Shown here one piece after another: positions 64-38,300 of a stretch of DNA of 64,000 nt. Origin of the DNA: Fimbriosthenelais zetlandica (Eukaryota); the NCBI GenBank assembly GCA_977030845.1, contig OZ365111.1, positions 12,152,001-12,216,000 on the forward strand, written 5' to 3'. Under the pieces are notes generated by a model, which saw only the letters and a list, made by a program, of their open reading frames with translations, had not been told where the DNA came from and did not search any database. The translations under genes were made by a program, and so were the position numbers. How positions within the stretch are numbered: the stretch's first letter is position 1; the number at the start of each line of letters is the position of its first letter.

Positions 64-3000
64 CTGAAAACAAAATGATGTATGTAAATTCTGCAGGGAA
101 ATGTAGAAACGTTTCTAAACATTGATTGAAAATTTCAAACATTGGTACCTGCAGGTTGGTAATGTCATAGGATGATCCTCTACACCTCTGAGTAGATTCA
201 TATCTGTCAGTGCCTTTTTCACCTCTTCTCTTGCAATAAATCGTGGCTTGCCCTTAAATTGAATTAAAATATTTAATTTAGGAACATATATTAATAAATT
301 ATTTATTATTAAATTAATATATTATTAAATAAATACATCCACTTAAAAGGCACAGTAATATTCTAGGCATCAATATATATATGAAAGTATATTCTATTGT
401 GAAATTCTTCAGAGACAAAAGTATATAATATTCTTGAAAAAAACAGAAATGTTTATAATTTTACCAGGAATTGTTCAGGAACGTTTATCATTCGGCCATG
501 ATCATCCAGCACGTTGATAAGCGGCAGCCGATGACGAACCCCTACTACATTATCAGTGTAATCATGAGCTGGTGTAAGCTTAACAGCACCTATATTAATA
601 AAAGAAAACATAAAATAAAGATCTAGATTTTATCTTCCAAATGAACCATGCCATTTCATTTTTATTGCCAGAACTGACCATCGCAAGTAGCTTTGGAGTT
701 CTTTATATTCTTTTAAGTTTTTTTCTATTTTTACGTTGTCAAATTATTAAATACCTGTATTACAAAAAAAATCAAACAATTTTTTAAAAAGAGTGAACAA
801 AGCTGTGGTCTTAATAACAGTTCTGCCGGAACATAAAATGGACACAAATGCATTGAGGTTAAATAATGTACCTGAGCCAAATTCTTTGTCCACAAATGTA
901 TCACAGATGATGGGTAGGGAGGCACCGTTCAGTGGGTGAGTGAGTCTACAGCCGTGTAGGTGGGTAAAGCGGGGGTCGTCAGGGTGGACAGCTACTGCAA
1001 CATCACCCAACATAGTCTCTAGTCTGGTGGTCGACACTATCACCTCCTCATCTACAAAGAAATTGTAATTCTTAAACATTTTCAAAACTTATACACTCAC
1101 ACTGGAAATACGTTCAAATCAAATTTGGTTCTGATATTGTTTCATCTGGAACCAAGTGCAAGTTAAAAATAAAAATATATATCTTATCTTACCAGATCCC
1201 TCAACAGGGTAAGCAAATGACGTCATTTGGCCAAAAGGAATTTCCTTCTCGTAACCAGGAATTTGGATGAAGGTTTTCTTATCGAGGTTTATATTTTCAA
1301 CCTGAGAATGAAAGCAATTTATTTGTAAGATAATCATATATAAATATCTTAAGGAATATTGCATGATTATGTTTGGTTTAAGTTTTAGAAGTACAGACCT
1401 CTATGTCTGATATGGCTGACTTGAGGGCACAGGACCAGTTGACAAGCCTCTCACTCCTGTAAATGAGACCTTCTTCGTGAAGTCTGATGAATGCTTCATC
1501 CACTGCGTAGCTGTGCCCCTAGTGATATAGAATCAATCAATATTATAGAAACTATTCCTTTAATATTGAAGATGTTCGAGCGAATAAAATGATGTCTCAA
1601 ATTTTAAAGAAATAGAGAAATGTCATATTTCTTATAGGAACGAATGATTTTCAAAAAATTCCAATAATTATTCTACAATTCATCGAAAAAAAGAATGATT
1701 ATCTTACTGGATCCAAAGTAAAATATTCACGGGACCAATCCAGCGATGAACCCAGTCGCCTCATCTGCTCAGAAATAGCATTTCCTTTCCTGTAAAATAT
1801 TAAATAAATTGCATTCGACACAAATAGATTATATATACCCAAATAAATATTCCCCCTTCCTGAATTCAGTGAGTCTATGCCTACATTTTTCTTGGTACAT
1901 GAAACACATAGGGGTTGCTCAGAACTGTGCATAATAAATTTGAACTCACTCTTGTTTCCACTTCCACACTTCGTTGGTGAAAGCCTCCCGGCCTATTTCA
2001 TGTCTAGTTTTGTTCTGTTCCCTCCACAGTTTCTTCTCCACTACCACCTGTGTGGCAATACCAGCATGGTCTGACCCCGGCAACCACAGCACCTTACGTC
2101 CACACATTCTGTGCCTGAAATTGAAGTATTCAAGATACATAATGTTTTACATTTATTTTTAATTAATGGTATTTACTGTTATAGGGTTAGGCTACTTACC
2201 ACCTAGCTAAGCTATCTTGGATGCTATTTCCTAGAGCATGACCAAGATGTAGTGTACCAGTAATGTTTGGAGGAGGAAGGCATATGGAGAATGATCCATC
2301 ACTTTTGTTCTTCTAAAATTCACAAGAGAACATGAAATTATACAGATCTCATTCTCATTCAGATACCCTTAGGCATCAATACATAATTTATATGCTTTAA
2401 TAATTAAGAATATTTTAATAAATAATTTGCCACAGACTTACTCTGGATTCGGGTGAGAAATGACCAGATTTTTCCCACCACTCATACCAGGCTGCCTCAA
2501 CATAGTCTGGGCTATACGTGTTTGGAAGGGGGCAACTTGTAGCTGGAAACAAATTCTGAAATTAATCTGAATTCAATAATAACTAAATAACAGTAAAATG
2601 TCCAAGACTAGGTTATGTGCCGTATATAACTTTGTAAGTTTCCAAATTGCCATAATTTAACAGTCGAAATTAAAATACTTTCGGTAGAATATACTTTGCG
2701 GTGACTAACATTTCTTTTCTCCAGGAACTGTTGGAACTGTGTAGAGGGGATCAATCCTTAGTAATTTCTGAAAAATTAAAAAAACATACAAGCACAAGAT
2801 TAGGCTTACCTAGAAGCTGTTTGACAGACGAGGCAAAATATATGACTCACAAATTACTAAATCATATCAGTAGATAAAATGTCCATAATTATTGTCTACG
2901 GTACTAGTATTATTAAAATGAGAAGATATGATCAAACCTTTTGCTGTTTTAGTTTTTGACGCTCCAAAGCCAGCAGTTTCCTTGCTTCCTTTTTAGCTTT

Positions 3001-3339
3001 CAGTGCCCTTCGTTTTTCAGAGCCATCGTCCTTTATCCTGTTATTATCTGGAGCTTCAGATTCGGATGTTGAATAACACCTTTTTCCAGAAGTTTGTTTA
3101 CAGCTGGGGCAATGTCTGTCAATGGGAATAACAGTGGGCCAGACATATCTCTCTACAACCGAGTGGAAATTCCGGCAAATTGAGGATGTTTTGTAAAATA
3201 CTGGCAGGGTATGCATAGATCCACATGAACTGCTTAGGAATCGTAACTTGTGGCGGTCCTCCTTCCCTCTGAATCTCTGTAAAAGACGCAACCAACGATG
3301 AATATACATCCCTGCATGCCGGTTCAAGGAGGCGGCCAT
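1..3339 (-). CDS. VARS2: Valyl-tRNA synthetase, mitochondrial type; gene span, 3' part outside the window
   Basis: 12 GT-AG exons join in frame: 3339-2938, 2767-2710, 2542-2442, 2312-2200, 2114-1950, 1789-1708, 1518-1399, 1301-1193, 1051-872, 589-465, 252-149, 63-<1. The protein has the class-I HIGH motif ([13 protein letters not shown]), plus [54 protein letters not shown] and [16 protein letters not shown]. The Arg-rich presequence and the PGSDHAG/RSGDVIE variants favour the mitochondrial paralog. Confidence 0.93.
149..252 (-). CDS. VARS2: VARS2 exon 11
   Basis: [34 protein letters not shown]; flanked by ag / gtacc; phase 0 to 2. Confidence 0.9.
465..589 (-). CDS. VARS2: VARS2 exon 10
   Basis: (G)[41 protein letters not shown]; phase 1 to 0. 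Confidence 0.92.
872..1051 (-). CDS. VARS2: VARS2 exon 9
   Basis: (D)[28 protein letters not shown]...DKEFGS; phase 1 to 1. Confidence 0.93.
1193..1301 (-). CDS. VARS2: VARS2 exon 8
   Basis: [36 protein letters not shown]; phase 0 to 1. Confidence 0.9.
1399..1518 (-). CDS. VARS2: VARS2 exon 7
   Basis: [40 protein letters not shown]. Confidence 0.92.
1708..1789 (-). CDS. VARS2: VARS2 exon 6
   Basis: (E)[27 protein letters not shown]. Confidence 0.92.
1950..2114 (-). CDS. VARS2: VARS2 exon 5
   Basis: (W)[30 protein letters not shown]...WKWKQ. Confidence 0.93.
2200..2312 (-). CDS. VARS2: VARS2 exon 4 (HIGH motif)
   Basis: [37 protein letters not shown]; gtaagt donor. Confidence 0.93.
2442..2542 (-). 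CDS. VARS2: VARS2 exon 3
   Basis: (S)[33 protein letters not shown]; the acceptor gtttccag fits the phase-1 donor of exon 2. Confidence 0.85.
2710..2767 (-). CDS. VARS2: VARS2 exon 2
   Basis: [19 protein letters not shown], matching the conserved ValRS Y-x-I/V-PT-x-PGEKK segment; ttttcag / gttagt. Confidence 0.85.
2938..3339 (-). CDS. VARS2: VARS2 exon 1 (mitochondrial presequence plus Lys/Arg-rich helix)
   Basis: [26 protein letters not shown]...[27 protein letters not shown]; donor AAG|gtttga. Confidence 0.85.
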
Positions 3340-3408
3340 GTTGGATGGGGATCACCGGAAGTGAGGATTCCCTCTCTAGTTCCTGGTTTACACGTACAAA
3401 ATGGCGGC
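3331..3408. promoter_or_regulatory. Candidate bidirectional promoter core (ETS/GABP-like and two YY1-like motifs)
   Basis: CCGGAAGTG at 3355-3363, CAAAATGGCGGC at 3397-3408 (+), and AACATGGCCGCC over the VARS2 ATG (-). The region is locally CpG-rich. Confidence 0.6.
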
Positions 3409-4854
3409 GCTCCAGTCACAAAATTTTAATAGATAGCTTGGTTCCCGCCTACTGTCTTGGTGGCGCTAGTGGCGCAAACATCTCAGTTCAGTTAGGTCTT
3501 GGGACAAGGCTATTTAATAGATCTTAATAATTTTATCAAGGATAGTAGACTCTACTATCCTTGATATTATTCCCACGCCTGGAAAGATTTACTCAAGCGA
3601 TAATAAATATAAATAACTAATATTAACCTACATATTTATGCATTCTAATATTTATAATATTATCACTTGAGGTAGGGCCTATAGACTTTGTATGCTGCTA
3701 AGCTACATAGAGAGATGTGACCTGAAGTCACCTTGATTTACGTCTTGCCATAGATTTATGTCTTACCATTATTTAGCATATGTCCTACCATTAGGCCTAG
3801 GCCTATATTCTACATCTTTTATTCTGGGTTTCATAGGCCTACATGCAGCATGAGGAATTATTTATAAGCTTACGGGACATGCAATACAGTTGACCAATCA
3901 TGCTTTCATTAATAGCATATATACAAGTTTTATTGGATTAATTAAATTTGTTCTTTGTATAAATTATGAGGGTAATATAGTGATTAGGCCTATTGATAGT
4001 ACAGCAATGCTAATTTTGTTGTGAGAATGATTTCTTTCAATATGGACTGTAACTTAGTTGCTGGATTATAGGTGGGATTAACTCTGGGATCAAGTCGGAC
4101 CAGTAGACTGATCCCTATATTAGCACTCACTGCATGGGGAGAGATTCAACTGGCTCTCTCGTGTGAAAATTCCATATCCACATACTGTACATATGTAAAG
4201 TCACGAGGCTTATTTCAAACATGCAGTAATAAGTAGGTTATTAATGACAAATCTCCAAAGTGTGTTGACCAAGAATTAATATCGGCACTTCATACCATGC
4301 TCTTGTTTTCGAAACAGCTAGGAATATTTGATATATGTAGGCCCAGGCCTATATTTCCTCGAAGGAGACGTAGATGAAAAATTAATTGGTTGCTTGTTGT
4401 ATGATTAAAATTCATCAATGATGGAACTGCTAATGTGGACATCGCTGCCTACATGTGTACTGCATGCTGATGGCAATCTGTGACAATACCATTTCGTATA
4501 CACGTACAAGGTATTTTATTTTACCCATTTTAACCATAGGATTTTACGGAATCTCATGCACCACCCTGGAGTTAAAGTCTACTTATTTAGGTCTGATTAG
4601 GCCTATAGATTTCTTGGAGATTCTATGTACGGTTTTGTGTTCATATATAATTATTACCTGCATGCAGGTATAGTTAGTGACGTTCCTCTTGGAGTTTCTT
4701 TTCAATGCTGCATGTAATATATTCCGTGTAAATAACTATGTAATTTTTAAATGAAAAACATAAATATAAACATGTATATTTTTATAAGTTTATATTCTAT
4801 TGCAGGAAAAATGGTGATCGATAGATTTTCTGAGGAAATTTGAAAATAGAAGTA

Positions 4855-6225
4855 ATGGCTTCAACTGGAAGTTTTCCAATAATATCTCGGACCTCGTCTC
4901 CTATGACTGCTTCTCTCAAAATCAGAGGAGTCATAGAGAAAGGCTATAATACAACATGGAGTGAAAAGGATAAAAAATTACTAGAAACACTGCAGAGATG
5001 CCGCGAGAGGTTAGCAGATCGTTTAAAATGTAACGATGCACAAGACAGACTGAATATATCAGCAGTAATTAAAGTCAAAAGGAAAGGGGAAGGAGAAGAT
5101 AGGAGGTCGCAGCGGAAAGATGCAAATACAAAATCCAGGGTTAAATCATACCCCCAATTTTCTGTTGTGTCTTATTCAGAAGACAAACAATCCAAATGGA
5201 TGCAGGAGAGAACGAAAAGGTCTTCAAAAAAGCCCAAATATCTTCAGTTTCCTCCCACTGAAAATAAAAAGCCGAATTCACAATATGGCAACGCCTTTAC
5301 TTCTATGCGAAAATGTGACAGTAAAGGTGGAGGTTGTGTAGCGAAATTCCCTTATAAAGGAAATGTCGAGGCTGGCGACGATGAAGTAATAGACAATGGA
5401 GTTAAAGTTTTGAAGGTTGAACCCATTTTGAGGACATCAACTTCCCTTTCAGGTAGAGAGCTAAAGAGTAAATCAGACCAAAGTCGGCCAAGGCATAAAT
5501 ATGTTATGTGTGAGTCACCATCTTCAGACCCAGCGAATATAGTGATACCAACAGCTGGAACACACTTGAAACCGAACTCTTCATTACCTGAAAAATCTAT
5601 ATCCAAAGAGAAATACAATAAAAATGAAATAGCCATTAAATATTCGAGAGGACCAAAGAAAGAGATTATCAAGGTATCGGCCAACATCATTGACTTCAGT
5701 CCCTCTGTTTCCAGCAAGGCACAAATCCTACTCAAGGAGAAAATATCCAAAAGAACTTATGATTTTCCTGGTACTGCCCCAATATCAGGGGTCAGGATAT
5801 CAAATCATTTTTCCACGACTGTCCCTTCACAGCATGACAAATTTTCATTACCGAATATTCCCAAAGAAAGAAAAATTAAACAGTCACTAGTCGAAAACTA
5901 CTGTATTCCCCAGAAGATTCGTGATGAGACACCACTAAATAATAGGCCTAACAGCTGTTGCGATACAAAACAAAATGATTTGAACTCCATTATTCATCAA
6001 GAGGAATCCTTCAAAACACCTGGAACAATATGCCCAGCACCATCGCCTGAGAGTGAACGGCAATATGACAATACTATCAATACACCTGATAAAATTTTCG
6101 TTTTGAATGTTACTAATTTAACTTCCCCTAATTTAGCATCCTCAAAGATGCCTTCAAGAAATTTAGAATCGTTTTCCAACCGTCCCACTTCGTGTATGAG
6201 TAAAATTACGCATGGAATTATATAA
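4855..6225 (+). CDS. Uncharacterised Lys/Ser/Pro-rich, probably disordered protein of about 456 aa (single coding exon)
   Basis: 1.37-kb stop-free frame in AT-rich DNA; first ATG at 4855 (gtaATGg). A splice acceptor (tattgcag) at 4805 implies a non-coding 5' exon. AATAAA at 6309 and 6314. No recognisable domain. Confidence 0.65.
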   Translation: MASTGSFPIISRTSSPMTASLKIRGVIEKGYNTTWSEKDKKLLETLQRCRERLADRLKCNDAQDRLNISAVIKVKRKGEGEDRRSQRKDANTKSRVKSYPQFSVVSYSEDKQSKWMQERTKRSSKKPKYLQFPPTENKKPNSQYGNAFTSMRKCDSKGGGCVAKFPYKGNVEAGDDEVIDNGVKVLKVEPILRTSTSLSGRELKSKSDQSRPRHKYVMCESPSSDPANIVIPTAGTHLKPNSSLPEKSISKEKYNKNEIAIKYSRGPKKEIIKVSANIIDFSPSVSSKAQILLKEKISKRTYDFPGTAPISGVRISNHFSTTVPSQHDKFSLPNIPKERKIKQSLVENYCIPQKIRDETPLNNRPNSCCDTKQNDLNSIIHQEESFKTPGTICPAPSPESERQYDNTINTPDKIFVLNVTNLTSPNLASSKMPSRNLESFSNRPTSCMSKITHGII

Positions 6226-7101: not shown

Positions 7102-10100
7102 GTGAGTGTCTGTTTCTTCGCAATTTGGGGCCGGTCTGATGCGGAGAATGGCCTGATCGGACATGTTTTTCCTCTTCCCCAATACACATTAGATGACAGT
7201 CGACCGGGTGATGGCTTGTCCATCTTGGATAGCACTGTGTAGTCTGTAGGCTAGTGTTAGAAGCATAGTGTAGCTACCACAGTACTACTGTGGCAGTCAC
7301 ACAACCATCCTCCTCAGACTCAACCAAACGTGCCCAACAAAATCCACCAGACTATCTACACTACAGCTACCGTACTACTAGATCATGTATCTTTGTAAAG
7401 AGATTTTGTAGGGTGTGCAATGGCTGATAAAATCATTATTCTTGCTCCATAATAATAATCTTCTTTCAACTACTCTCACTCTCAGCTCCGGTGGCTCATT
7501 CCTATTTCCTAGCGGAGTGAGGCCTGAATGAGGCAGGCCTACCCTTGGGCCTATCCCCTGTGTCCCCATGTAGGCATACTCTATTACCCTGTCCAATTAT
7601 TACAATACACATAGAACGTAGAAGATAGTATTTTGACAAATTATAAACGTAATATGGACAAAGACCTCTAGTAGTAGAGGCCGACTAAGCTAGACTTTTT
7701 TTTATATGAATTCACTGACTGAGGTGTGGCTCTGGCTCGTGTGACTTTAGTTTAGCCTAGGCCTATGGCTATGCATGTGGTAGATCTCCTTTTAAATAGC
7801 CGGTAATTAAAAAAAAAAAATGGGTAAAGGGGGGTGGACAGTAGGCCTAATATCCTACCCGGAGTAACTAATTATCTAAATTATCTAATAGTAAATAATA
7901 TCATAATTATTAACATAAGAAAAAAAGCAAGGCCAAGCTCATCACTTCAATGCAACATTAGAAAAATAAATGCAATAAATTAATCTTTAATACACCGAGC
8001 TCCATAATTGTTTGAATCTAGATATGTCCAACATCACTGTCTGGAAAGCCAACAGACTACAGTGATCGGTCTAAAACCTCATCATGTCAACTGACTGAGG
8101 GATAGACTAATAGGCCTATAGACCTTCTTACAGTTACACTAGTCTAGTATTTAACAGAATGTTTAGATCTAGATCTACCCCATTTTTATTTTTAGCTGAA
8201 TATTATTAACGTTATGTCATTGTTACAAATTTTAATATTTTCCTTCAGCGAAAGCTTTACCAGTCTGTTGTTGACGATGTGATCAATAATGTGCGAGAAG
8301 CATTCCTGGATGAGGGCGTGGACGAGCAAATACTACAGGAGCTTAAACAGGTAGATTTTCTACTTTAGTTTTGACAGCTTATTTATGTGGGGAAAGCTAC
8401 TTCAGAGAGGCTCCCTATCAATCCAGTTTATGGATTTTAATTTCCATATTTCAACCCAGTTTGTAATTTGTCAGGACAGCTTTTGGCACCTAATTTTATT
8501 ATTGTAGATCCAGATGTATAGGCCAAGGCCTTAGATAACACCAACGAGAGTACCGGTACTTTATTTTACTCTCGTTGATAGGACACATAAATTAAAATAT
8601 AACTACTCAGGGCCTAGCCTAGACAATGGTTTATAGGCCTAACCGTTACTAAATGCGAAAATATATTATGAATTTTTATTTATATTAAGAAATAAATTAC
8701 CGGGTACCGTATATGATGATATTTCTTCCAGCTATGGGAATCAAAGTTACAACAGTCCAAAGCTGTAGATCCTATCAATAAAGAGCACGAGGAGTTGTAT
8801 ATGACATATCAACAGCAACAACAACAGAAACAACAGCAACCACAACAACACCAGCAACATCAGCAAGTCCAGCATGCAGCACACGCACCAATCCAGCAGA
8901 CAGTTATCTCAGGTCCGCCCCCTGGTGTCAATGTCACACAACTCTCACAGAAACCAGTCCTAGCTCAAACAGGTGAGGTCCCCATTGGTTACATAATGAT
9001 CAGATATATCATTGGCTCTATTTTTACTAAATTTATGACACCGGTACATATAGGCCTAAACACTTGGAAATTAGAAAAAAAAAAAGAATAAGAAAAGGTG
9101 ACATGTGTAGAGATACCTGATAGTGTACACATACATTCTTTGAAAGAAAGAAAAATATTAAAAAAAAAAAAATTAAAAGATTATACCGTATTTAAAAGAA
9201 ATCAATTTCATATATAAATTTGTCACACAGCATTTATTGAAGAAAATTAATCTCTGTACTTTTCATATTTTAATTTCCGCTCCAGTCACTCTATCACAGG
9301 CGGCGCAACTACCACAAGGAATCCAGATCGCGGCATCCAACCTGGTTAGTATTTTATTCCGTGAACTTAATTAAATTAAAATTAAAAACTTAAAGGCGCG
9401 GTGAAAATCCCATACTGCAGGAAAGACATATATTATGTTATATATAAAGATATAAATTCGATCTTTGTTAAAATATTTATATGGGCTTTTACCATGGCAA
9501 TAGTTTAAATAAAGTTAATATGTGATGTACACTTCATGTGTCATCTCTCTCTTGTCACAGAGTGCAGGCGCACAGCAAGCCACTCTGGCCCTTCCTGGAG
9601 GAATCCTACCACAACACATCATCAGTGGTCAACTGAGTAATGGAACAATCACCCTCCAAACCAGCCCGGCAGCAGCTCAAATACTGCTACAACAGCAGAC
9701 AGGGCAGGGGCCTGCCACCATCACCATGGCTAACCCACAACAGATAGCAGCGGTCCAACAGTTAGCCCGGTCCCAGGCTCTCGCTGCAGCCGGCCAACTA
9801 ACACCCAAATCCGAGGTCTCTATCACTCTTTAAAAAATAATTTAAAATTTTTTAAATAAAGCGACTAAATGTGAGACTACCACTATTTTCTGGTAAAATT
9901 GAAATAAATTCAAAATATTTTTTTTTTTAGAAAACTATCATAGCTAAATTCTCATTTCTTCTTGTTTTATAATAGTCTATAGATTCATTTTGTGGGTGCT
10001 ATGCCATTTTTGATGTTGAACATTACAATCAGACTTTGGGATAATATTTTTAGTCTCAAAATGTATAAATAAAGTAAAAGTATCATTTTCTGTTTTTAGC

Positions 10101-14335: not shown

Positions 14336-17300
14336 GTGAGTATCGATATTGATTATAATGGCAGAGATTTGAACTAAAAATTGATGAGTGTTCAAAGTGA
14401 AAGGAACGAGATTGTAGCTGCCTTTAAAAAAGCCTGAAAATTAAAATTGTGCACCAGCACATGGCACTTTTAATTAATTGAATAAATTAAAGTTTACTAG
14501 ACATTTAATAATAATTAATTGGACTGAAATCCATGAATATTTATCAACATTTTTTGGTATTAAATCATGTATGATTTTTCGGTTGGAGGATACATTGTTT
14601 TAATTGTCGAATAAAAAGATCTAATTTAATTAAATGTGACTTTTTTTTAGATTCAAACATTCTATCAAGACCAGGGACCAATTACCTACAAGGATTTATA
14701 TGATGGGGCCTTTTTGAATTCAGTAATGCTGGAGATGTAAGTATACCATATACTAATACAGGCCCTGTATTTATACTATATTAGGCCTATATCATGAAAC
14801 AAAGTATCAAAGTATATCGGTGTAGGCTATAGCATATATATATATATCTGTCTGACACTTTTTACCGATTGTTATCAGTTCATATCCATTCGCCAAGCTT
14901 TAAGTGTAGGCAATACGGTTCTTGATAATCACTAATCCACAAAAGCTCTTTTAAGCACCATTGGAATGTTGGTTCTTATAATGTGCGGGTATCTGATGGC
15001 ATTTTTGTTAAGAGTAAGATTTCGACACAAGATAAATGATCGAGATTATATTCCGGTTATCAATATCAGCATGAGTTCAGACATATAACCCACTGGTAAT
15101 GACGAAGACTTGTGCAGTCAATGGCCAAGAAATTCTTTTTTATTGGTCCTATAATTAACCTATAGATCATATCAGTAATTATTATATATACCGGTAGTCC
15201 AGAAACATTTTTAGGTTATATGGTGAAAAATCCAATAAATTTAGAAATTTAAAAGAAATTTAAATCTAACAATTTATTCTTTTTAAAGTGATCCTCGGGC
15301 CCTTGAGGTAACTGGTGGATCCAGTGTGGAAGAGCGCCTGAACACATGGGATATACTTTTAAAGAACATCAAGACCTATTATCAGGTAAGCCTTTCCCTT
15401 TTCCTCGTGCAGACAGACAAACCTTTCCATTGTCACCCATACACGCCTGAACAATCTTCATTTTTTTTTATTCCCAGCTGACATGATGATTGGGATTCTC
15501 ACCCAGTCATCTGTTCAAACCTCTATCATATAAAATAGGTCCCTACCCTGGACAAATAAATGGACAGTTCTCAATGAACAAACATTTAGGGGTAAATATA
15601 ATGGAAGTACTGTACTATATTAGAAGAAGAGGGTTGGGAGCCAAGTAAATGCAAAGGTGCACACATTATACTGTGTTGGCATAGGTTGTGTCCCTATAAG
15701 ATAGTCTGCTGTGGACTGGTGTCAATATGGAGACCCAGGTTATGATTTGTGAACCAGACTCCGCTCTATGGCCATGTGTCACTGAGTGCAGCAGATGTTG
15801 AGGGATATGCAGTACTTATCCTTATGCAGATGAGAACCTCGAAAAGTCACATTTGCCTTGTTAAACTAAGTCCCCTTATCCTTTAAAAGTGAAAATACAT
15901 AAAGTAAACATACTGGTAATGACCCATAGGTCAGAGTGGCAAGATTACTATGTACACAGGTCTTGGTGAAGTAGATTAAACAGGGTCTGAACCTGTAACC
16001 CCTGTCCAGAGAGGATTTGCATATTTTTACCATATCATCATAAGAATACATACAAACATTGCTATCAATTGAGAATTACGTCACATTAATTTTTAATTAA
16101 TTATATTATTTTAAAGCAAGATATTTTTGTTGACTATCTCAGGGGAAGTTTCAGGGCATTAATATATTTAAATTTGTTGGTTGAACACCAAAACTCTGCA
16201 CTAGAAACTGTTTCTATTTTGTATTGGTTTTTATTGTCCAACGTTTCGGCAAGAGGCTGCCTTCTTCAGGGACTAATATATTTTTTTAGAAAATATTGAC
16301 ATTTGACAGAATTATGTGGTTGCACTTCACAATAAAACTAAAGGGTTTGGCTCTACACACACTCAGGAATGTACCTCTATAGGAACCCTAATCATATGAC
16401 TCATAAAATGTACCTATGCCGGACCACACTGGGTGAAACCATGTTTAAAATACCAATCCTGGCCTCTGATCAGAGTCATGTGTATTTCAGGAACAATCAA
16501 TGTGCCAATACATAGCCGAGGGATGAGTAAGCCATTGTTGTAATAACATTACTTAATAGAATTGAAAATCTACTTGATGACCACCACCATGATTCCTGCT
16601 CATTATAGGCGTGACGTCAATTAAATCTGACCAAGGGATACAGTTACAGAAAACAGTTGGGGGTTGACTGCGTCATGGGGAGGGGTGATTGAGTGGGTTG
16701 CATATATATATCAAAAAGTACCTTTAACTAAAGAATAGGTGGGTGGACGTGGCATTTACATATAGTAAACCCACAGAGACAGCTTTGGCTAATCTGGTAA
16801 TCAATTATGCCAATGCATAAACAATGAAAGTTTATATCCTTTGTTAAGTATGTAAAGAGGCGGTGTTTACCTTTGGGATTGAGCTAGGGGCATGCTCTAA
16901 CTTGTAATATACATAATCAGCTTGAGCTTTGATACTTGTGACTAAAAAGCCAGGAGATTTATTTAGGTGACTCAGAAGACTTTCACTATATAGAATGACT
17001 TTCAAGGCAATAATTACACCTTTCCAGGCTGTAATCGGAAGGGAAGGTTTTGGCATGTACCTATATGCTTGGTGAGACGGCTGATTAATCCTAGTCAAGG
17101 AGAAGGATGGAGTCTTGCTGGGGAGGCGTGGTCGGCTTGTACACCAGACATTTCCTTCTCACCTGCCCTCTTTGTTGCAAAACTTTCCAAAACATTTCCA
17201 AATGTAAACAGGCCTTGTTGGTATCTGGGGTGAATTTTGAACCACCTTTCTGACCAAATTTGGTTATTTATGTAGAATTTGTTCAAAAAATCTTATTAGT

Positions 17301-35300: not shown

Positions 35301-38300
35301 TATTGCATGATAAACCTCATCATTGTAAAACCAGATAACCCCAGGCTGTGTGTGTTTTTCTCCTCAACCAGACACAGTTTCCTGGTTGTCTCAATGAAGA
35401 CCGATATTAAAATAATTGAAAAAGTTCAATATTTAGACTGTTTGGTTCAATGGGTGTCGTGGAAAATGTATGAAAAAGTTCATTATTTAGACTGTTTGGT
35501 TCAAAGTCCAGACATATTGGCAATAACATTTAGCAGGTGGTTATGACCTGGGAAAGGTCTTATTGTTTGTTCGATGACAATATTTCCTCACTTTCATATT
35601 AAAATGACATGCCTTACTCAATCAATTTTCATATTTTTCAGAAAAAGCCAGACAACAACTCCTAAAGGTGCTACTGCTCGTGCTGGGATGTGCCGTCCAG
35701 TGCGAGCGGAAGGAGGAATTCATTGGAAACATAAAGATTTTAGACATTGGGATCCAGCATGCTATTGTAGAAAACATCCAAGAGGTTAGTCTTATTCTAG
35801 TGTTACATTTCCTACAGAGGTTTCATTCTTGTCTTTTTTCTCCCGCTGCTTACAGTATTGTATTACTAGTGTATATACCACTAATCCGATTCTCCATCCG
35901 GCTCCATCCGATAGCTTTCTATTCACACAAAGTACTTGTAATTGAACAGTCTTTACACATAGGTAAGGATAACCACTGACACAATTTCAATCATTAAATG
36001 TCTTTAGAAATGGGGAATCGGATGGCGACTGATGGGAGAATCGGACCAATGTACTCCCGCCTTATCTTGGGAATCTCCTTGTGGCACAGGCCGCAATAGT
36101 GTTGGTAAAAGGGACCAGCAATGACAGACATGTTACATACAACAATGCTATCCTAACACGCTATAAAAAAGCATCTGCTCCTGCTCATATCGTTCTATAC
36201 ATTCCCTCTAGAAATTATACCCCCTGTCTAGACATTAATATTTGCTATTTTTAAAATTTTTCTCTTGAAAGAAGCATGAGACTCGTATAAGAAATCGACC
36301 TTTTCTGGAATGATTTAAGGAGAAAGACCTGTCTTTTCGTTGAGTTAGGTAAGAGAGAGCTCCAAACCCCTGTTGCCTATTTGTCATGGTAACCAGAACG
36401 TGATGAACAGTTCCACGTGTTTCCCCCTTTTTCTGGTCGCAGGAATCTGATTGTCTTTTTAGTAGAGATGTGTTTATCCCAGGGCCTGTCAGAAGTGTTG
36501 GTGCTACTCGGTCTCGGGGGAAAACTTGCTAAAAAGCCCTCAGACATGTGAAGTTATTTTAATAGACTGTATCCTATAAATTATCTCTCAAGGGGACGTA
36601 GTGTATATTCGTGGGAAAGTGCTACGGCCCTCTATATTTGGAAAGAGACATTACAAAAAATATTATGTCTCAAGATGCTCAGCACATATTTGTCTGATTC
36701 CAGAGTTTTCTTCTCACATTTTCAGAATATCTTTGAACTTGAAAACTGATTGAGACCACCTGGAACTTACACTAGTTGTCTGACACTGTGATTTGCCAGT
36801 GCTCCTTCACTCTCCCTCTTTATCGACATCTGAGATATCATTTAAAGTTCTTGGGATTTAAAGACAAAAAATGTTCTGGATTTGGCACACGATTGTTCTG
36901 CGTGTAGCAGGTTGAGGGTCTAAAGTACTCGAGTGAAATAAACATTCTGCCAGCGTTAAGATGGTCTGGTTAAGGGGACTGGGAGCTGAGTGGCTCAAGC
37001 TATATTATAGTGGTGGTAATGTTAGGGTACCAGCTCGAGGCCCTGCTCTGGGTCAGAGGACCAAGTGCTGGTGCCAAGTGGCATGAGCGCAAAAACTTGT
37101 CTTATTTTGAAGTTGGCAACAATTCCTTTGCCCACTTATGACTTTTGTCATCAGCCACCGAAACCCTTGCCCTGTAAATGGAGAATTTTTGCATCATTCC
37201 TGATACGAAACTGTGTCCCTGCCATGTGTTTTGAACACGTTATCCGTGCTATGCTCACGTCGGATCCAAGCTAGTTGATTCCAACTTAGAGTAAAATGAT
37301 TGATCATTTTACTCTAAGATTCCAACCACAGCTCTCTGAGACCAGCGAGTACATAGTACAAAATGTAATTTTTTAAGCATAAGGGAAAACATTCACAGTT
37401 GAATATGGGTGAACATTATTAAATGTGAAAGAAATCTAGATTTAATATAATGTTCGGAAAGTCAATAAAAGACTGTTGAATGATGCGTGAGAGGAGAGAG
37501 TTGAAGATGGCTGAGCCCCAGCCTGTATAGACTGGGACAGGTTTATGTGGTTGGGTGACAGGCAATGAAGTGGAAAGTCAGGGCTCCCCGGGAGGTCCTT
37601 CCCCTCATGTCAGGGCCTGGGTAAGTGACCTTACCCCTCACAAAAAATAGATCCAACTAAAAATAGCTGCATGTCATCTAACCCTTCTGAAACCCTTCAA
37701 TGGAAAAGCCCCTGAAGTCTGATGTAAGCCTTGGGGGGAAACCTTTCATGTTTAATACCTAAGGTGGCGAATTTCTCGGTTTTTCTCCCAAATGTTTTGC
37801 CACATGTGGACAGTGTATGTGTGGGTAATTTGTACCAATTTAAAGCTTGACACCATTGATGGGACCTCCTGAGCCTGAGGGCTTTAAGGGTCATGGCTGA
37901 CCATGTGATTCTTATCTAAGGGCGGGTCTGTCCACCCTGATTAAGACATGGCTGTCAGGTGACATTTGTTGGTCATTTATTTTCGGACAGATATGCAATC
38001 AGGGTCATTCTATAGTGCATTCTTCGTGTCATATAATTTGTTAACCCCCAGTCAAAATTAGACAATTAAAGAGAATACCAACAGAAATCTTATTTAGCAA
38101 GGGGTATTATTCAAGACCGGAATATAAATTACTTATATGCTTTCTCATAGAAACTGACAGGGATTGTATAAATTCGTTGCATCTTTGCATAAAAAACTAA
38201 ATTCAAAAAGAAAAGGTAGCAGAGGAAGCAGCTGGACGTTTGATGTGCATGCCTCACTACAGCTCAGTGGCACCACCTGGCGTGTGAATGATCAAGCTCG

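What the first reader, a model, noticed from the sequence alone, without database searches (positions are those of the whole stretch)
16232..16278. Complete minimal hammerhead ribozyme, antisense within CCDC88 intron 3
Seen on the minus strand: 5'-UAUU-A-GUCC [CUGAAGA] A [GGCA-GCCUCU-UGCC] [GAA-ACGU-U]/GGAC-AAUA-AAAA. Stem I is GUCC/GGAC, extended by UAUU/AAUA across a 1-nt bulge. Stem II is 4 bp, and stem III is reduced to a self-complementary ACGU. The predicted cut is after the U at 16240, followed by AAUAAA. Established: minimal type-I hammerheads with a palindromic stem III occur in Penelope-like element terminal repeats and cleave as dimers, and an extra nucleotide after A9 is tolerated in a natural viroid hammerhead. 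Inference: a solo Penelope-type remnant whose core and all helices remain intact although no RT or GIY-YIG ORF survives nearby. It is either recent or retained, and could process antisense transcripts or act in trans with other genomic copies. The GUU triplet is permitted but usually slower than GUC.
Basis: partly seen in the sequence, partly recalled or inferred. Interest (0 to 1): 0.8.

Follow-up and report, generated by a model that had tools for sequence, protein, structure and literature searches.

The report
Solo Penelope-element hammerhead ribozyme copy
The motif is a real minimal hammerhead ribozyme, but it is an ordinary one: the first 38 bases of a recently inserted 104-base end-fragment of a Penelope-like jumping gene that has many copies in this genome.

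Summary
The hammerhead motif is present exactly as described on the minus strand at 16236-16273. It is not a chance match. It opens a 104-nt insertion (16170-16273) flanked by a perfect 10-bp target-site duplication.

That insertion is 100% identical to the 3' end of a multi-copy retroelement. Long copies of the element carry a GIY-YIG ORF and a 423-bp tandem terminal repeat, and a 51%-identical relative has RT plus GIY-YIG in one ORF. So this is a Penelope-like element (PLE).

A bulge-containing min-HHR pattern hits the genome 161 times, against 2 for the reversed control. The hits fall into at least five families whose helices I and II covary (7 of 9 pairs show double-sided changes).

Every published hallmark of PLE "min-HHRs" is met. 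This includes the extra base after A9, which is a hallmark and not an anomaly.

- The UAUU/AAUA extension of helix I uses flanking duplicated target DNA and is fortuitous.
- The copy is a young, dead-on-arrival short insertion, not a decayed full element or a retained one.
- "Intron 3" is unverified.

No RNA data were obtainable and cleavage is untested. Three other first-reader notes flag PLE-type hammerheads elsewhere in this genome.

One side observation: copy 5' ends cluster at the ribozyme's 5' edge.

The parts
16170..16273 (-). 104-nt short-form insertion of the 3'-terminal module (hammerhead plus tail) of a Penelope-like element
   Evidence: 100% identical over 107 nt to L021. All copies share the 3' end ...CAACCAACAAATTT.
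16236..16273 (-). Minimal type-I hammerhead (min-HHR): helix I GUCC/GGAC, core CUGAAGA, bulged A, helix II GGCA(G)/(U)UGCC, GAA, palindromic ACGU, U17
   Evidence: Sequence; MFE fold shows helices I and II; covariation across families.
16240..16240 (-). U17; predicted cleavage 3' of this base (GUU|GGAC)
   Evidence: Follows from hammerhead numbering applied. Not tested experimentally.
16241..16244 (-). ACGU, self-complementary helix III strand (15.1-15.2/16.2-16.1), which can pair only with a second copy
   Evidence: Invariant in alignment A1. The dimer requirement comes from PMC4209133 and PMC6765202.
16262..16262 (-). Unpaired A between A9 and G10.1
   Evidence: 161 genome hits with the bulge. 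The no-bulge pattern gives 4 hits (control 6); 3 of those 4 also match the bulge pattern and read as bulge = G.
16170..16235 (-). 66-nt tail with blocks conserved across PLE families: AAUAAAAA (16228-16235), AGUUUUGGUG (16186-16195), and an AC-rich 3' end
16274..16283 (.). Target-site duplication, copy on the 5' side of the element (AAATATATTA read on the minus strand)
   Evidence: a 10/10 match abutting both ends; 0 of 20000 flank shuffles reach 10.
16160..16169 (.). Target-site duplication, copy on the 3' side of the element

Best explanation
Window 16170-16273 (minus strand) is a young, 104-nt, TSD-flanked short insertion of the 3'-terminal module of a Penelope-like retroelement. The element has RT, a C-terminal GIY-YIG endonuclease and a CX4CxxC linker of the Neptune/Nematis type. 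The module begins with a dimer-type minimal hammerhead and ends with a 66-nt tail holding conserved sequence blocks. In full elements arranged in partial tandem, the hammerhead lies in the pseudo-LTR, about 100 nt upstream of the next unit's 5' end. Inferred from the literature: two such motifs pair through ACGU to form helix III and cut after GUU, probably slowly and with help from the element's protein, so processing multimeric transcripts. Inferred from the AC-rich 3' end and conserved blocks: the tail is where the element's RT starts target-primed reverse transcription at an AT-rich nick. At this locus the copy was dead on arrival. It has no ORF and no partner ribozyme nearby, and it is antisense to the neighbouring gene. 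Its ribozyme sequence is intact only because the insertion is recent.
For: Repeat family with a common 3' end and variable 5' ends. L021 has hammerheads at 3336 and 8884, a 423-bp direct repeat and a GIY-YIG ORF between them. One search gave 122 PLE-ORF matches in the genome, many with open frames of roughly 600-1000 aa. L031's ORF has RVT_1 at 1.2e-12 and GIY-YIG at 2.3e-6. The CX4CxxC linker is visible. The min-HHR pattern gives 161 hits against 2 in the control. At least 5 families covary in helices I and II: 84.8% of cells are paired against 10-43% when partners are slid, 7 of 9 pairs have double-sided changes, and 0 of 500 shuffles reach the observed score. A family C hammerhead lies 1.75 kb downstream of another GIY-YIG hit on the same strand. 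The TSD is a perfect 10/10 match. Only 107 nt of the element is in the window and there is no PLE protein match. Substitution density is equal in ribozyme and tail of dispersed copies (2.14% vs 2.27%, p=0.9) while loop 2 varies at 24%. The published min-HHR hallmarks all match (PMC4209133).
Against: No cleavage or RNA evidence is available; no sequencing run was listed. Rfam hammerhead models give no hit. Helix I is only 4 bp and the dimer helix III only 4 bp, so activity may be very low. For an anole PLE, the hammerhead was dispensable for in vitro insertion and no cleaved RNA ends were seen (PMC11167929). The sampled long copies of this family have interrupted RT ORFs. RVT_1 was shown only in a 51%-identical relative.
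Confidence: 0.88

Rival explanations
1. The roughly 105-nt hammerhead-plus-tail unit is a discrete non-autonomous retroelement (SINE-like or mini-retrozyme) with its own defined 5' end, mobilised in trans by PLE proteins, and not a random 5' truncation product.
For: 22 of 35 family A copies begin 0-8 nt upstream of helix I, and 12 of 15 sampled copies of families C, D and E do the same. An older subfamily (loop GCAACU, 3' end AACTAACAAAA) was seen almost only as short units. Short units have their own 8-13-bp TSDs. CCA|GTCC at the boundary fits an Inr-like YYANWYY, and PLE transcript starts are reported to lie in the pLTR (PMC6765202).
Against: Young short copies, including the window's, are identical to the tails of long elements, so they may be truncation or short-transcript by-products of the autonomous element. 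Sampling ranked by score could not see copies truncated inside the tail. There are no tandem arrays and no RNA evidence.
Confidence: 0.3
2. The conserved hammerhead-like fold serves mainly as a protein-binding or recognition structure of the PLE 3' module, and self-cleavage is incidental or vestigial.
For: Core and helices are conserved together with tail blocks across at least 5 families. The literature reports very low in vitro activity (PMC4209133) and protein-assisted cleavage that is not needed for in vitro insertion (PMC11167929).
Against: Every catalytic core nucleotide is invariant across families, including positions needed only for chemistry, and H17 is never G in the aligned families. 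Part of this invariance was imposed by the search pattern.
Confidence: 0.2
3. The solo copy has been co-opted by the host, for example to process an antisense transcript of the CCDC88-like gene or to act in trans with other copies.
For: The ribozyme sequence is intact, and the copy lies upstream of, or within, a + strand CCDC88-like gene.
Against: The copy is identical to 14 others, so it is too young to show retention. Dispersed copies decay neutrally. There is no partner hammerhead in 64 kb. A monomer cannot form helix III.
Confidence: 0.03
4. It is a chance match to a loose hammerhead descriptor.
For: No Rfam hammerhead hit. The fold z-score is only -2.05.
Against: 161 hits against 2 in the control. 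Compensatory covariation across families. Fixed position in a PLE 3' module.
Confidence: 0.01

Closest known systems
Minimal hammerheads (min-HHR) of metazoan Penelope-like elements (Cervera & de la Pena 2014, PMC4209133; Lunse et al. 2017 as cited in PMC6765202)
   Same: Type I topology; helix I of 4-5 bp; unpaired nucleotide between A9 and G10.1; G10.1-C11.1; no helix III hairpin, only the palindromic 15.1-16.1 tetranucleotide; location in the pLTR or 3' end of an RT plus GIY-YIG element; mostly found as dispersed single motifs.
   Different: Helix II here is 4-5 bp, not the 7-8 bp of the Schistosoma families. The carrier elements have about 2 kb with extra ORFs between the endonuclease and the ribozyme. 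Activity is untested.
Poseidon PLE of Anolis carolinensis (PAc; PMC11167929)
   Same: AT-rich target, reverse transcription starting in an AC-rich 3' region, and a hammerhead in the repeated terminal region. In a tandem the ribozyme sits upstream of the next ORF.
   Different: In PAc the ORF starts inside helix II. Here the ribozyme is about 200 nt upstream of the first ORF of the next unit. The protein-assisted cleavage shown for PAc was not tested here.
Non-LTR retrozymes of animals (PMC7229834; bioRxiv 10.64898/2026.07.22.740005)
   Same: Non-coding units carrying type I hammerheads, related to PLE pLTRs and probably mobilised by PLEs.
   Different: Retrozymes are tandem repeats of about 170-400 bp with canonical hammerheads (6-bp helix I, loop-loop contacts) that yield circRNAs. 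This is a solo 104-nt unit with a minimal ribozyme, bounded by a TSD and not by the cleavage site.
CChMVd (+) hammerhead with extra A10 (De la Pena & Flores 2001, as cited in PMC4209133)
   Same: An extra unpaired nucleotide between A9 and G10.1.
   Different: It is a viroid type III ribozyme with stable helices. The shared feature is an analogy, not family membership.
Schistosoma Sm-alpha/Sj-alpha SINE-like elements with hammerheads (as reviewed in PMC6765202)
   Same: A short dispersed retroposon carrying a type I hammerhead.
   Different: Those carry a Pol III promoter and a canonical ribozyme. No such promoter was recognised here, and an internal TTTT argues against Pol III transcription.

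Membership tests
PLE minimal hammerhead (min-HHR) | Hammerhead catalytic core: C3 U4 G5 A6 N7 G8 A9, G12 A13 A14, A15.1/U16.1, H17 not G | tested here: met
   CUGAAGA ... GAA A-CG-U U. Invariant in A1, though partly imposed by the search pattern.
PLE minimal hammerhead (min-HHR) | [quoted passage not shown] | tested here: met
   A at 16262. Genome-wide, 161 hits with the bulge. The no-bulge pattern gives 4 hits against a control of 6, and 3 of those 4 also match the bulge pattern.
PLE minimal hammerhead (min-HHR) | G10.1-C11.1 closing pair of helix II | tested here: met
   19 of 19 distinct rows (the search pattern required this).
PLE minimal hammerhead (min-HHR) | No helix III hairpin; palindromic 15.2-16.2 that allows an intermolecular helix III | tested here: met
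   ACGU at 16244-16241.
PLE minimal hammerhead (min-HHR) | Helices I (4-5 bp) and II supported by compensatory changes among consensus families within one genome | tested here: met
   all 4 helix I pairs and 3 of 5 helix II pairs show double-sided changes, and slid controls collapse. The search pattern did not require helix I or pairs 10.2-10.4.
PLE minimal hammerhead (min-HHR) | Located in the terminal repeat (pLTR) of an element encoding RT and GIY-YIG endonuclease | tested here: met
   For the family: L021 tandem repeat plus GIY-YIG, and RVT_1 plus GIY-YIG in relative L031. The window copy itself is solo.
PLE minimal hammerhead (min-HHR) | Self-cleavage, as a dimer, 3' of H17 | not testable with these tools
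   No RNA runs were listed. An in vitro assay is needed.
Rfam Hammerhead_1 (RF00163) and other Rfam hammerhead models | Score at or above the gathering threshold | tested here: not met
   No hammerhead hit at E<=10 in 2.5 kb or 81 nt. The genome-wide best RF00163 hit is 20 bits elsewhere. These models expect a helix III hairpin.
Animal non-LTR retrozyme | Head-to-tail tandem repeats, each with a canonical type I hammerhead | tested here: not met
   There is a single motif in the 64 kb, the insertion is bounded by a TSD, and the hits are dispersed.
Penelope-like element, EN+ with Zn-finger-like linker (Neptune/Nematis type) | RT followed by C-terminal GIY-YIG with a CX2-5CxxC linker; partial-tandem pLTR; frequent 5' truncation | tested here: met
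   CX4CxxC; 423-bp repeat; truncation series. Clade placement by phylogeny was not done.

The most novel reading that the evidence does not exclude
In every PLE family of this genome, the 5' edge of the hammerhead marks a preferred 5' end. A roughly 105-nt 'ribozyme plus RT-entry tail' would then be a discrete, repeatedly retrotransposed unit. Either it is a minimal non-autonomous retroelement transcribed from an initiator at the ribozyme's first base, or it is the footprint of the PLE ribonucleoprotein on its 3' module. If so, the hammerhead fold would delimit the mobile unit instead of, or as well as, cutting it.
Probability: 0.3. Interest if true: 0.5.

Novelty: new member of a known kind. 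Interest (0 to 1): 0.25.

Why it matters
On its own this is routine repeat annotation. It is a recent dead-on-arrival fragment of a Penelope-like element carrying the well-described dimer-type minimal hammerhead, with no sign of host function.

It is useful in two ways:
- It is a clean worked example showing that Rfam hammerhead models miss this class. A simple bulge-containing descriptor recovers about 160 copies with strong covariation.
- It is a pointer to a PLE lineage worth curating. That lineage has conserved extra ORFs 3' of the endonuclease, a conserved tail motif, and copy 5' ends piled up at the ribozyme's edge. These features bear on the still unresolved question of what hammerheads do for PLEs.

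Tried and rejected
- **Rfam scans.** Scans at E<=10 on 2.5 kb and on 81 nt, and a genome-wide RF00163 search, gave no hammerhead hit. I do not count this as evidence against the motif, because the models need a helix III hairpin.
- **Atlas and Pfam search of the 270-aa ORF** downstream of the endonuclease gave nothing.
- **Strict and relaxed descriptor scans of other PLE loci** (L024-L032) found no further ribozymes. Those loci mostly do not reach their 3' ends, and L031's tail was not identified.
It was replaced by short fetches.
- **The look-up of sequencing runs**, once with kind rna and once with kind any, listed none. Read laying was therefore not used and there is no expression or RNA-end evidence.
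- **RNAcofold of two 38-mers** returned only the trivial swapped duplex and was uninformative.
- **RNAalifold on the tails of 5 families** predicted no shared structure.
- **A Pol III (A/B box) reading of the tail** was considered and rejected. The matches are imperfect and there is an internal TTTT.
- **AAUAAA as a poly(A) signal** was considered and rejected. Copies carry no poly(A), and the block is part of a conserved A(A/U)UAAAAA tail motif.
- **My first script for mapping 5' boundaries** failed for lack of anchors and was replaced.
- **The Lunse et al. paper** could not be read.
Full report
**1. The observation**

Read on the minus strand, window 16273-16236 is GUCC CUGAAGA A GGCA GCCUCU UGCC GAA ACGU U GGAC, followed by AAUAAAAA. 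The MFE fold of the 55-nt and 104-nt stretches forms helix I (GUCC/GGAC) and helix II. Helix II is 4 bp plus an optional G.U, leaving a 4-nt loop.

Rfam's hammerhead models do not report it at E<=10, in a 2.5-kb scan or in an 81-nt scan. RF00163 finds only one 20-bit hit elsewhere in the whole genome. Those models expect a helix III hairpin, which this motif lacks, so the miss does not count against it.

**2. It is a repeat, and the repeat is a retroelement tail**

Searching the window's own assembly (447 Mb, 79 contigs) with 221 nt around the motif gave 266 candidates. All 40 that were scored match only query positions about 87-192, which is window 16274-16169.

All copies share one 3' end (...CAACCAACAAATTT) and then diverge. 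Their 5' ends vary from about 104 nt to more than 1.6 kb. That is the signature of a 5'-truncating retroelement.

The exact 38-nt ribozyme occurs 15 times, and 31 times with up to 3 mismatches, against none for the reversed control.

**3. The carrier is a Penelope-like element (PLE)**

In L021 (G000:C14:2511000-2520999) the motif occurs twice on one strand, at 3336 and 8884. Both lie inside a 423-bp direct repeat (3022-3442 and 8568-8990, 98.6% identical). This is the partial-tandem "pseudo-LTR" arrangement.

Between the two copies lies an ORF with a GIY-YIG domain (PF01541, E=1.6e-6, above the curated cutoff). That ORF matches 122 places in the genome, many inside open frames of roughly 600-1000 aa. 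A 51%-identical relative (L031) has RVT_1 (E=1.2e-12) and GIY-YIG (E=2.3e-6) in one 775-aa ORF.

Both proteins show a CX4CxxC motif just before the GIY-YIG. This is the Zn-finger-like linker described for Neptune and Nematis PLEs (PMC8557442). The sampled long copies of the window's own family have interrupted RT regions. I describe this only and reconstructed nothing.

**4. Not chance, and structurally supported**

A pattern requiring only the core, one bulged base, G10.1/C11.1 and GAAACGUH hits the genome 78+83 times, against 1+1 for the reversed control. The same pattern without the bulge gives 4 hits against a control of 6. Three of those 4 also appear in the bulge-pattern list and read as bulge = G.

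The hits fall into at least five sequence families:

| Family | Helix I | Helix II | Triplet and notes |
|---|---|---|---|
| A (the window's) and B | GUCC/GGAC | GGCAG/YUGCC | GUU |
| C | UACC/GGUA | GGAC/GUCC | GUU |
| D | UAAU/AUUA | GGCC/GGCC | GUC |
| E | AUC/GAU (plus a second 3-bp segment) | GGCC/GGCC, 11-nt loop | GUU, N7 = C |

On a 21-sequence alignment (A1), the hammerhead pairing gives these results:
- 84.8% of cells are paired, against 10-43% when partners are slid by 1-3 columns.
- 7 of 9 pairs show changes on both sides, including all four helix I pairs.
- The covariation score is 0.494, against 0.142 +/- 0.03 in shuffles (0 of 500 reach it).

The search pattern did not constrain helix I or pairs 10.2-10.4, so this support is independent of how the sequences were found. 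Because the five families are few independent lineages, the shuffle count is not a probability. The slid control is the fairer comparison.

**5. Comparison with the known class**

Cervera & de la Pena (PMC4209133) defined PLE "min-HHRs" by four features that emerged beyond their descriptor:
- consensus families full of compensatory changes;
- a conserved G10.1-C11.1 pair;
- palindromic 15.2-16.2 with little or no loop 3.

They also noted a short helix I (4-5 bp), location in the pLTRs, and mostly dispersed single copies. All of these are met here.

Such ribozymes are reported to cleave only as dimers, and weakly (PMC4209133; Lunse et al. as cited in PMC6765202). In an anole PLE the ribozyme needed the element's protein, was dispensable for in vitro insertion, and left no detectable cleaved ends in RNA-seq (PMC11167929).

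**6. What the window copy is**

Only 107 nt of the element is present in the window, at 100% identity. No PLE protein matches anywhere in the 64 kb.

The insertion is bounded by a perfect 10-bp direct repeat, AAATATATTA (16283-16274 and 16169-16160 on the minus strand). In 20000 shuffles of the flanks, none reached 10. The element proper is therefore 16273-16170, 104 nt, starting at the first base of helix I. The A at 16274 could belong to either the element or the TSD.

The extension is fortuitous.

The AT-rich target and the AC-rich element end match what was measured for the anole PLE: AT-rich DNA cleavage, with reverse transcription starting in an AC-rich region (PMC11167929). Applying this to the present element is an inference.

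**7. Recent, not retained**

The copy is identical to 14 others and to copies inside long elements.

Across 33 family A copies, deviation from the majority base is 2.14% in the ribozyme (excluding loop 2) and 2.27% in the tail (Fisher p = 0.90). Loop 2 differs at 24%, reflecting differences between lineages. Individual old copies carry helix-breaking and core-breaking changes.

Inserted copies therefore decay neutrally. Constraint acts on the source elements, where core, helices and tail are kept and loop 2 is free to vary.

**8. Local context**

A HOOK_N exon (profile positions 102-146) lies at window 35650-35784 on the + strand. Long coiled-coil ORFs typical of a Girdin/CCDC88-like gene lie at 52-59 kb on the + strand. 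An earlier first-reader note (s1-191796) places a GBA motif at 63.66 kb.

The ribozyme is therefore antisense to that gene if 16.2 kb lies inside the transcription unit. I did not locate the upstream exons, so "intron 3" is unverified.

There is no second hammerhead in the window, so no partner in cis for a dimer. No sequencing run was listed for the element or for the locus, so there is no expression or RNA-end evidence.

**9. Mechanism (what is shown and what is inferred)**

Shown here:
- the motif, its family, its covariation, and its fixed place in the PLE 3' module and pLTR;
- the TSD-bounded solo insertion;
- neutral decay of dispersed copies.

Inferred from the literature: in tandem transcripts two motifs pair through ACGU and cleave after U17, slowly and probably with protein assistance.

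Inferred from sequence: the tail blocks A(A/U)UAAAAA and AGUU(U/G)UGG(U/G)G, conserved across all five families, together with the AC-rich end, form the RT entry site.

At this locus I expect no activity or function.

**10. Side observations**

(a) Copy 5' ends pile up at the ribozyme's 5' edge. 22 of 35 family A copies start 0-8 nt upstream of helix I. 12 of 15 sampled copies of families C, D and E do the same. Each has its own AT-rich TSD.

The boundary CCA|GUCC fits an initiator-like YYANWYY, and PLE transcript starts are reported to lie in the pLTR (PMC6765202). Alternatives are RNP protection of the 3' module or a true non-autonomous mini-element. My sampling could not see copies truncated inside the tail, so this remains a lead.

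(b) Long copies have about 2 kb between the endonuclease ORF and the ribozyme. This stretch holds a C2H2-like ORF and an overlapping ORF in another frame. The same arrangement occurs in the 51%-identical relative, and the zinc-finger ORFs are homologous (E=2e-10). Canonical EN+ PLEs are described as single-ORF elements (PMC8557442).

**11. Verdict**

The object is a new member of a known kind (PLE min-HHR, solo short insertion) and is of low intrinsic interest.

Three other first-reader notes (s1-228875, s1-207743, s1-214106) flag PLE-type hammerheads elsewhere in this genome. That is consistent with the roughly 160-copy census, but I did not check those places individually.

Noticed in passing
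L021:7083-8256 (+) and L031:2756-4116 (-): This PLE lineage has extra ORFs between the RT-EN ORF and the 3' hammerhead: a C2H2-like zinc-finger ORF and an overlapping ORF in another frame. The arrangement is kept in two families that are 51% identical in RT-EN, and the zinc-finger ORFs are homologous (E=2e-10). Canonical EN+ PLEs are described as single-ORF elements.
   Followed up: partly
Family A loci L002-L020 and L033-L046; families C-E loci L050-L065; window 16273/16274: The 5' ends of genomic copies cluster within 0-8 nt of the hammerhead's 5' edge (22 of 35 in family A, 12 of 15 in families C-E), and each short unit has its own 8-13-bp AT-rich TSD. The boundary CCA|GTCC fits an Inr-like YYANWYY.
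   Followed up: partly
window 16186-16195 and 16228-16235 (-); the same blocks in L049-L065: Two tail sequence blocks, A(A/U)UAAAAA and AGUU(U/G)UGG(U/G)G, are conserved across all five hammerhead families, with no predicted shared secondary structure. They are probably the RT recognition or initiation region.
   Followed up: partly
G000:C14:1108042-1135168: PLE-ORF matches with 768-aa open frames recur at a period of about 8.74 kb (four units), suggesting a tandem array of a different PLE-containing repeat.
   Followed up: no
window 750-1088 (-): An ORF fragment with a motif that looks like valyl-tRNA synthetase (my recollection, not searched) suggests a neighbouring gene on the minus strand at the window start.
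   Followed up: no
window 4834-6222 (+): A 463-aa open frame of unknown nature, possibly another mobile element. It was not searched.
   Followed up: no
L066 (G000:C13:17776325-17776662, minus): One pattern hit, with a CUGAUGA core and a 22-nt segment between the cores, does not belong to any of the five families and lacks a convincing helix I. It is probably a chance match.
   Followed up: no
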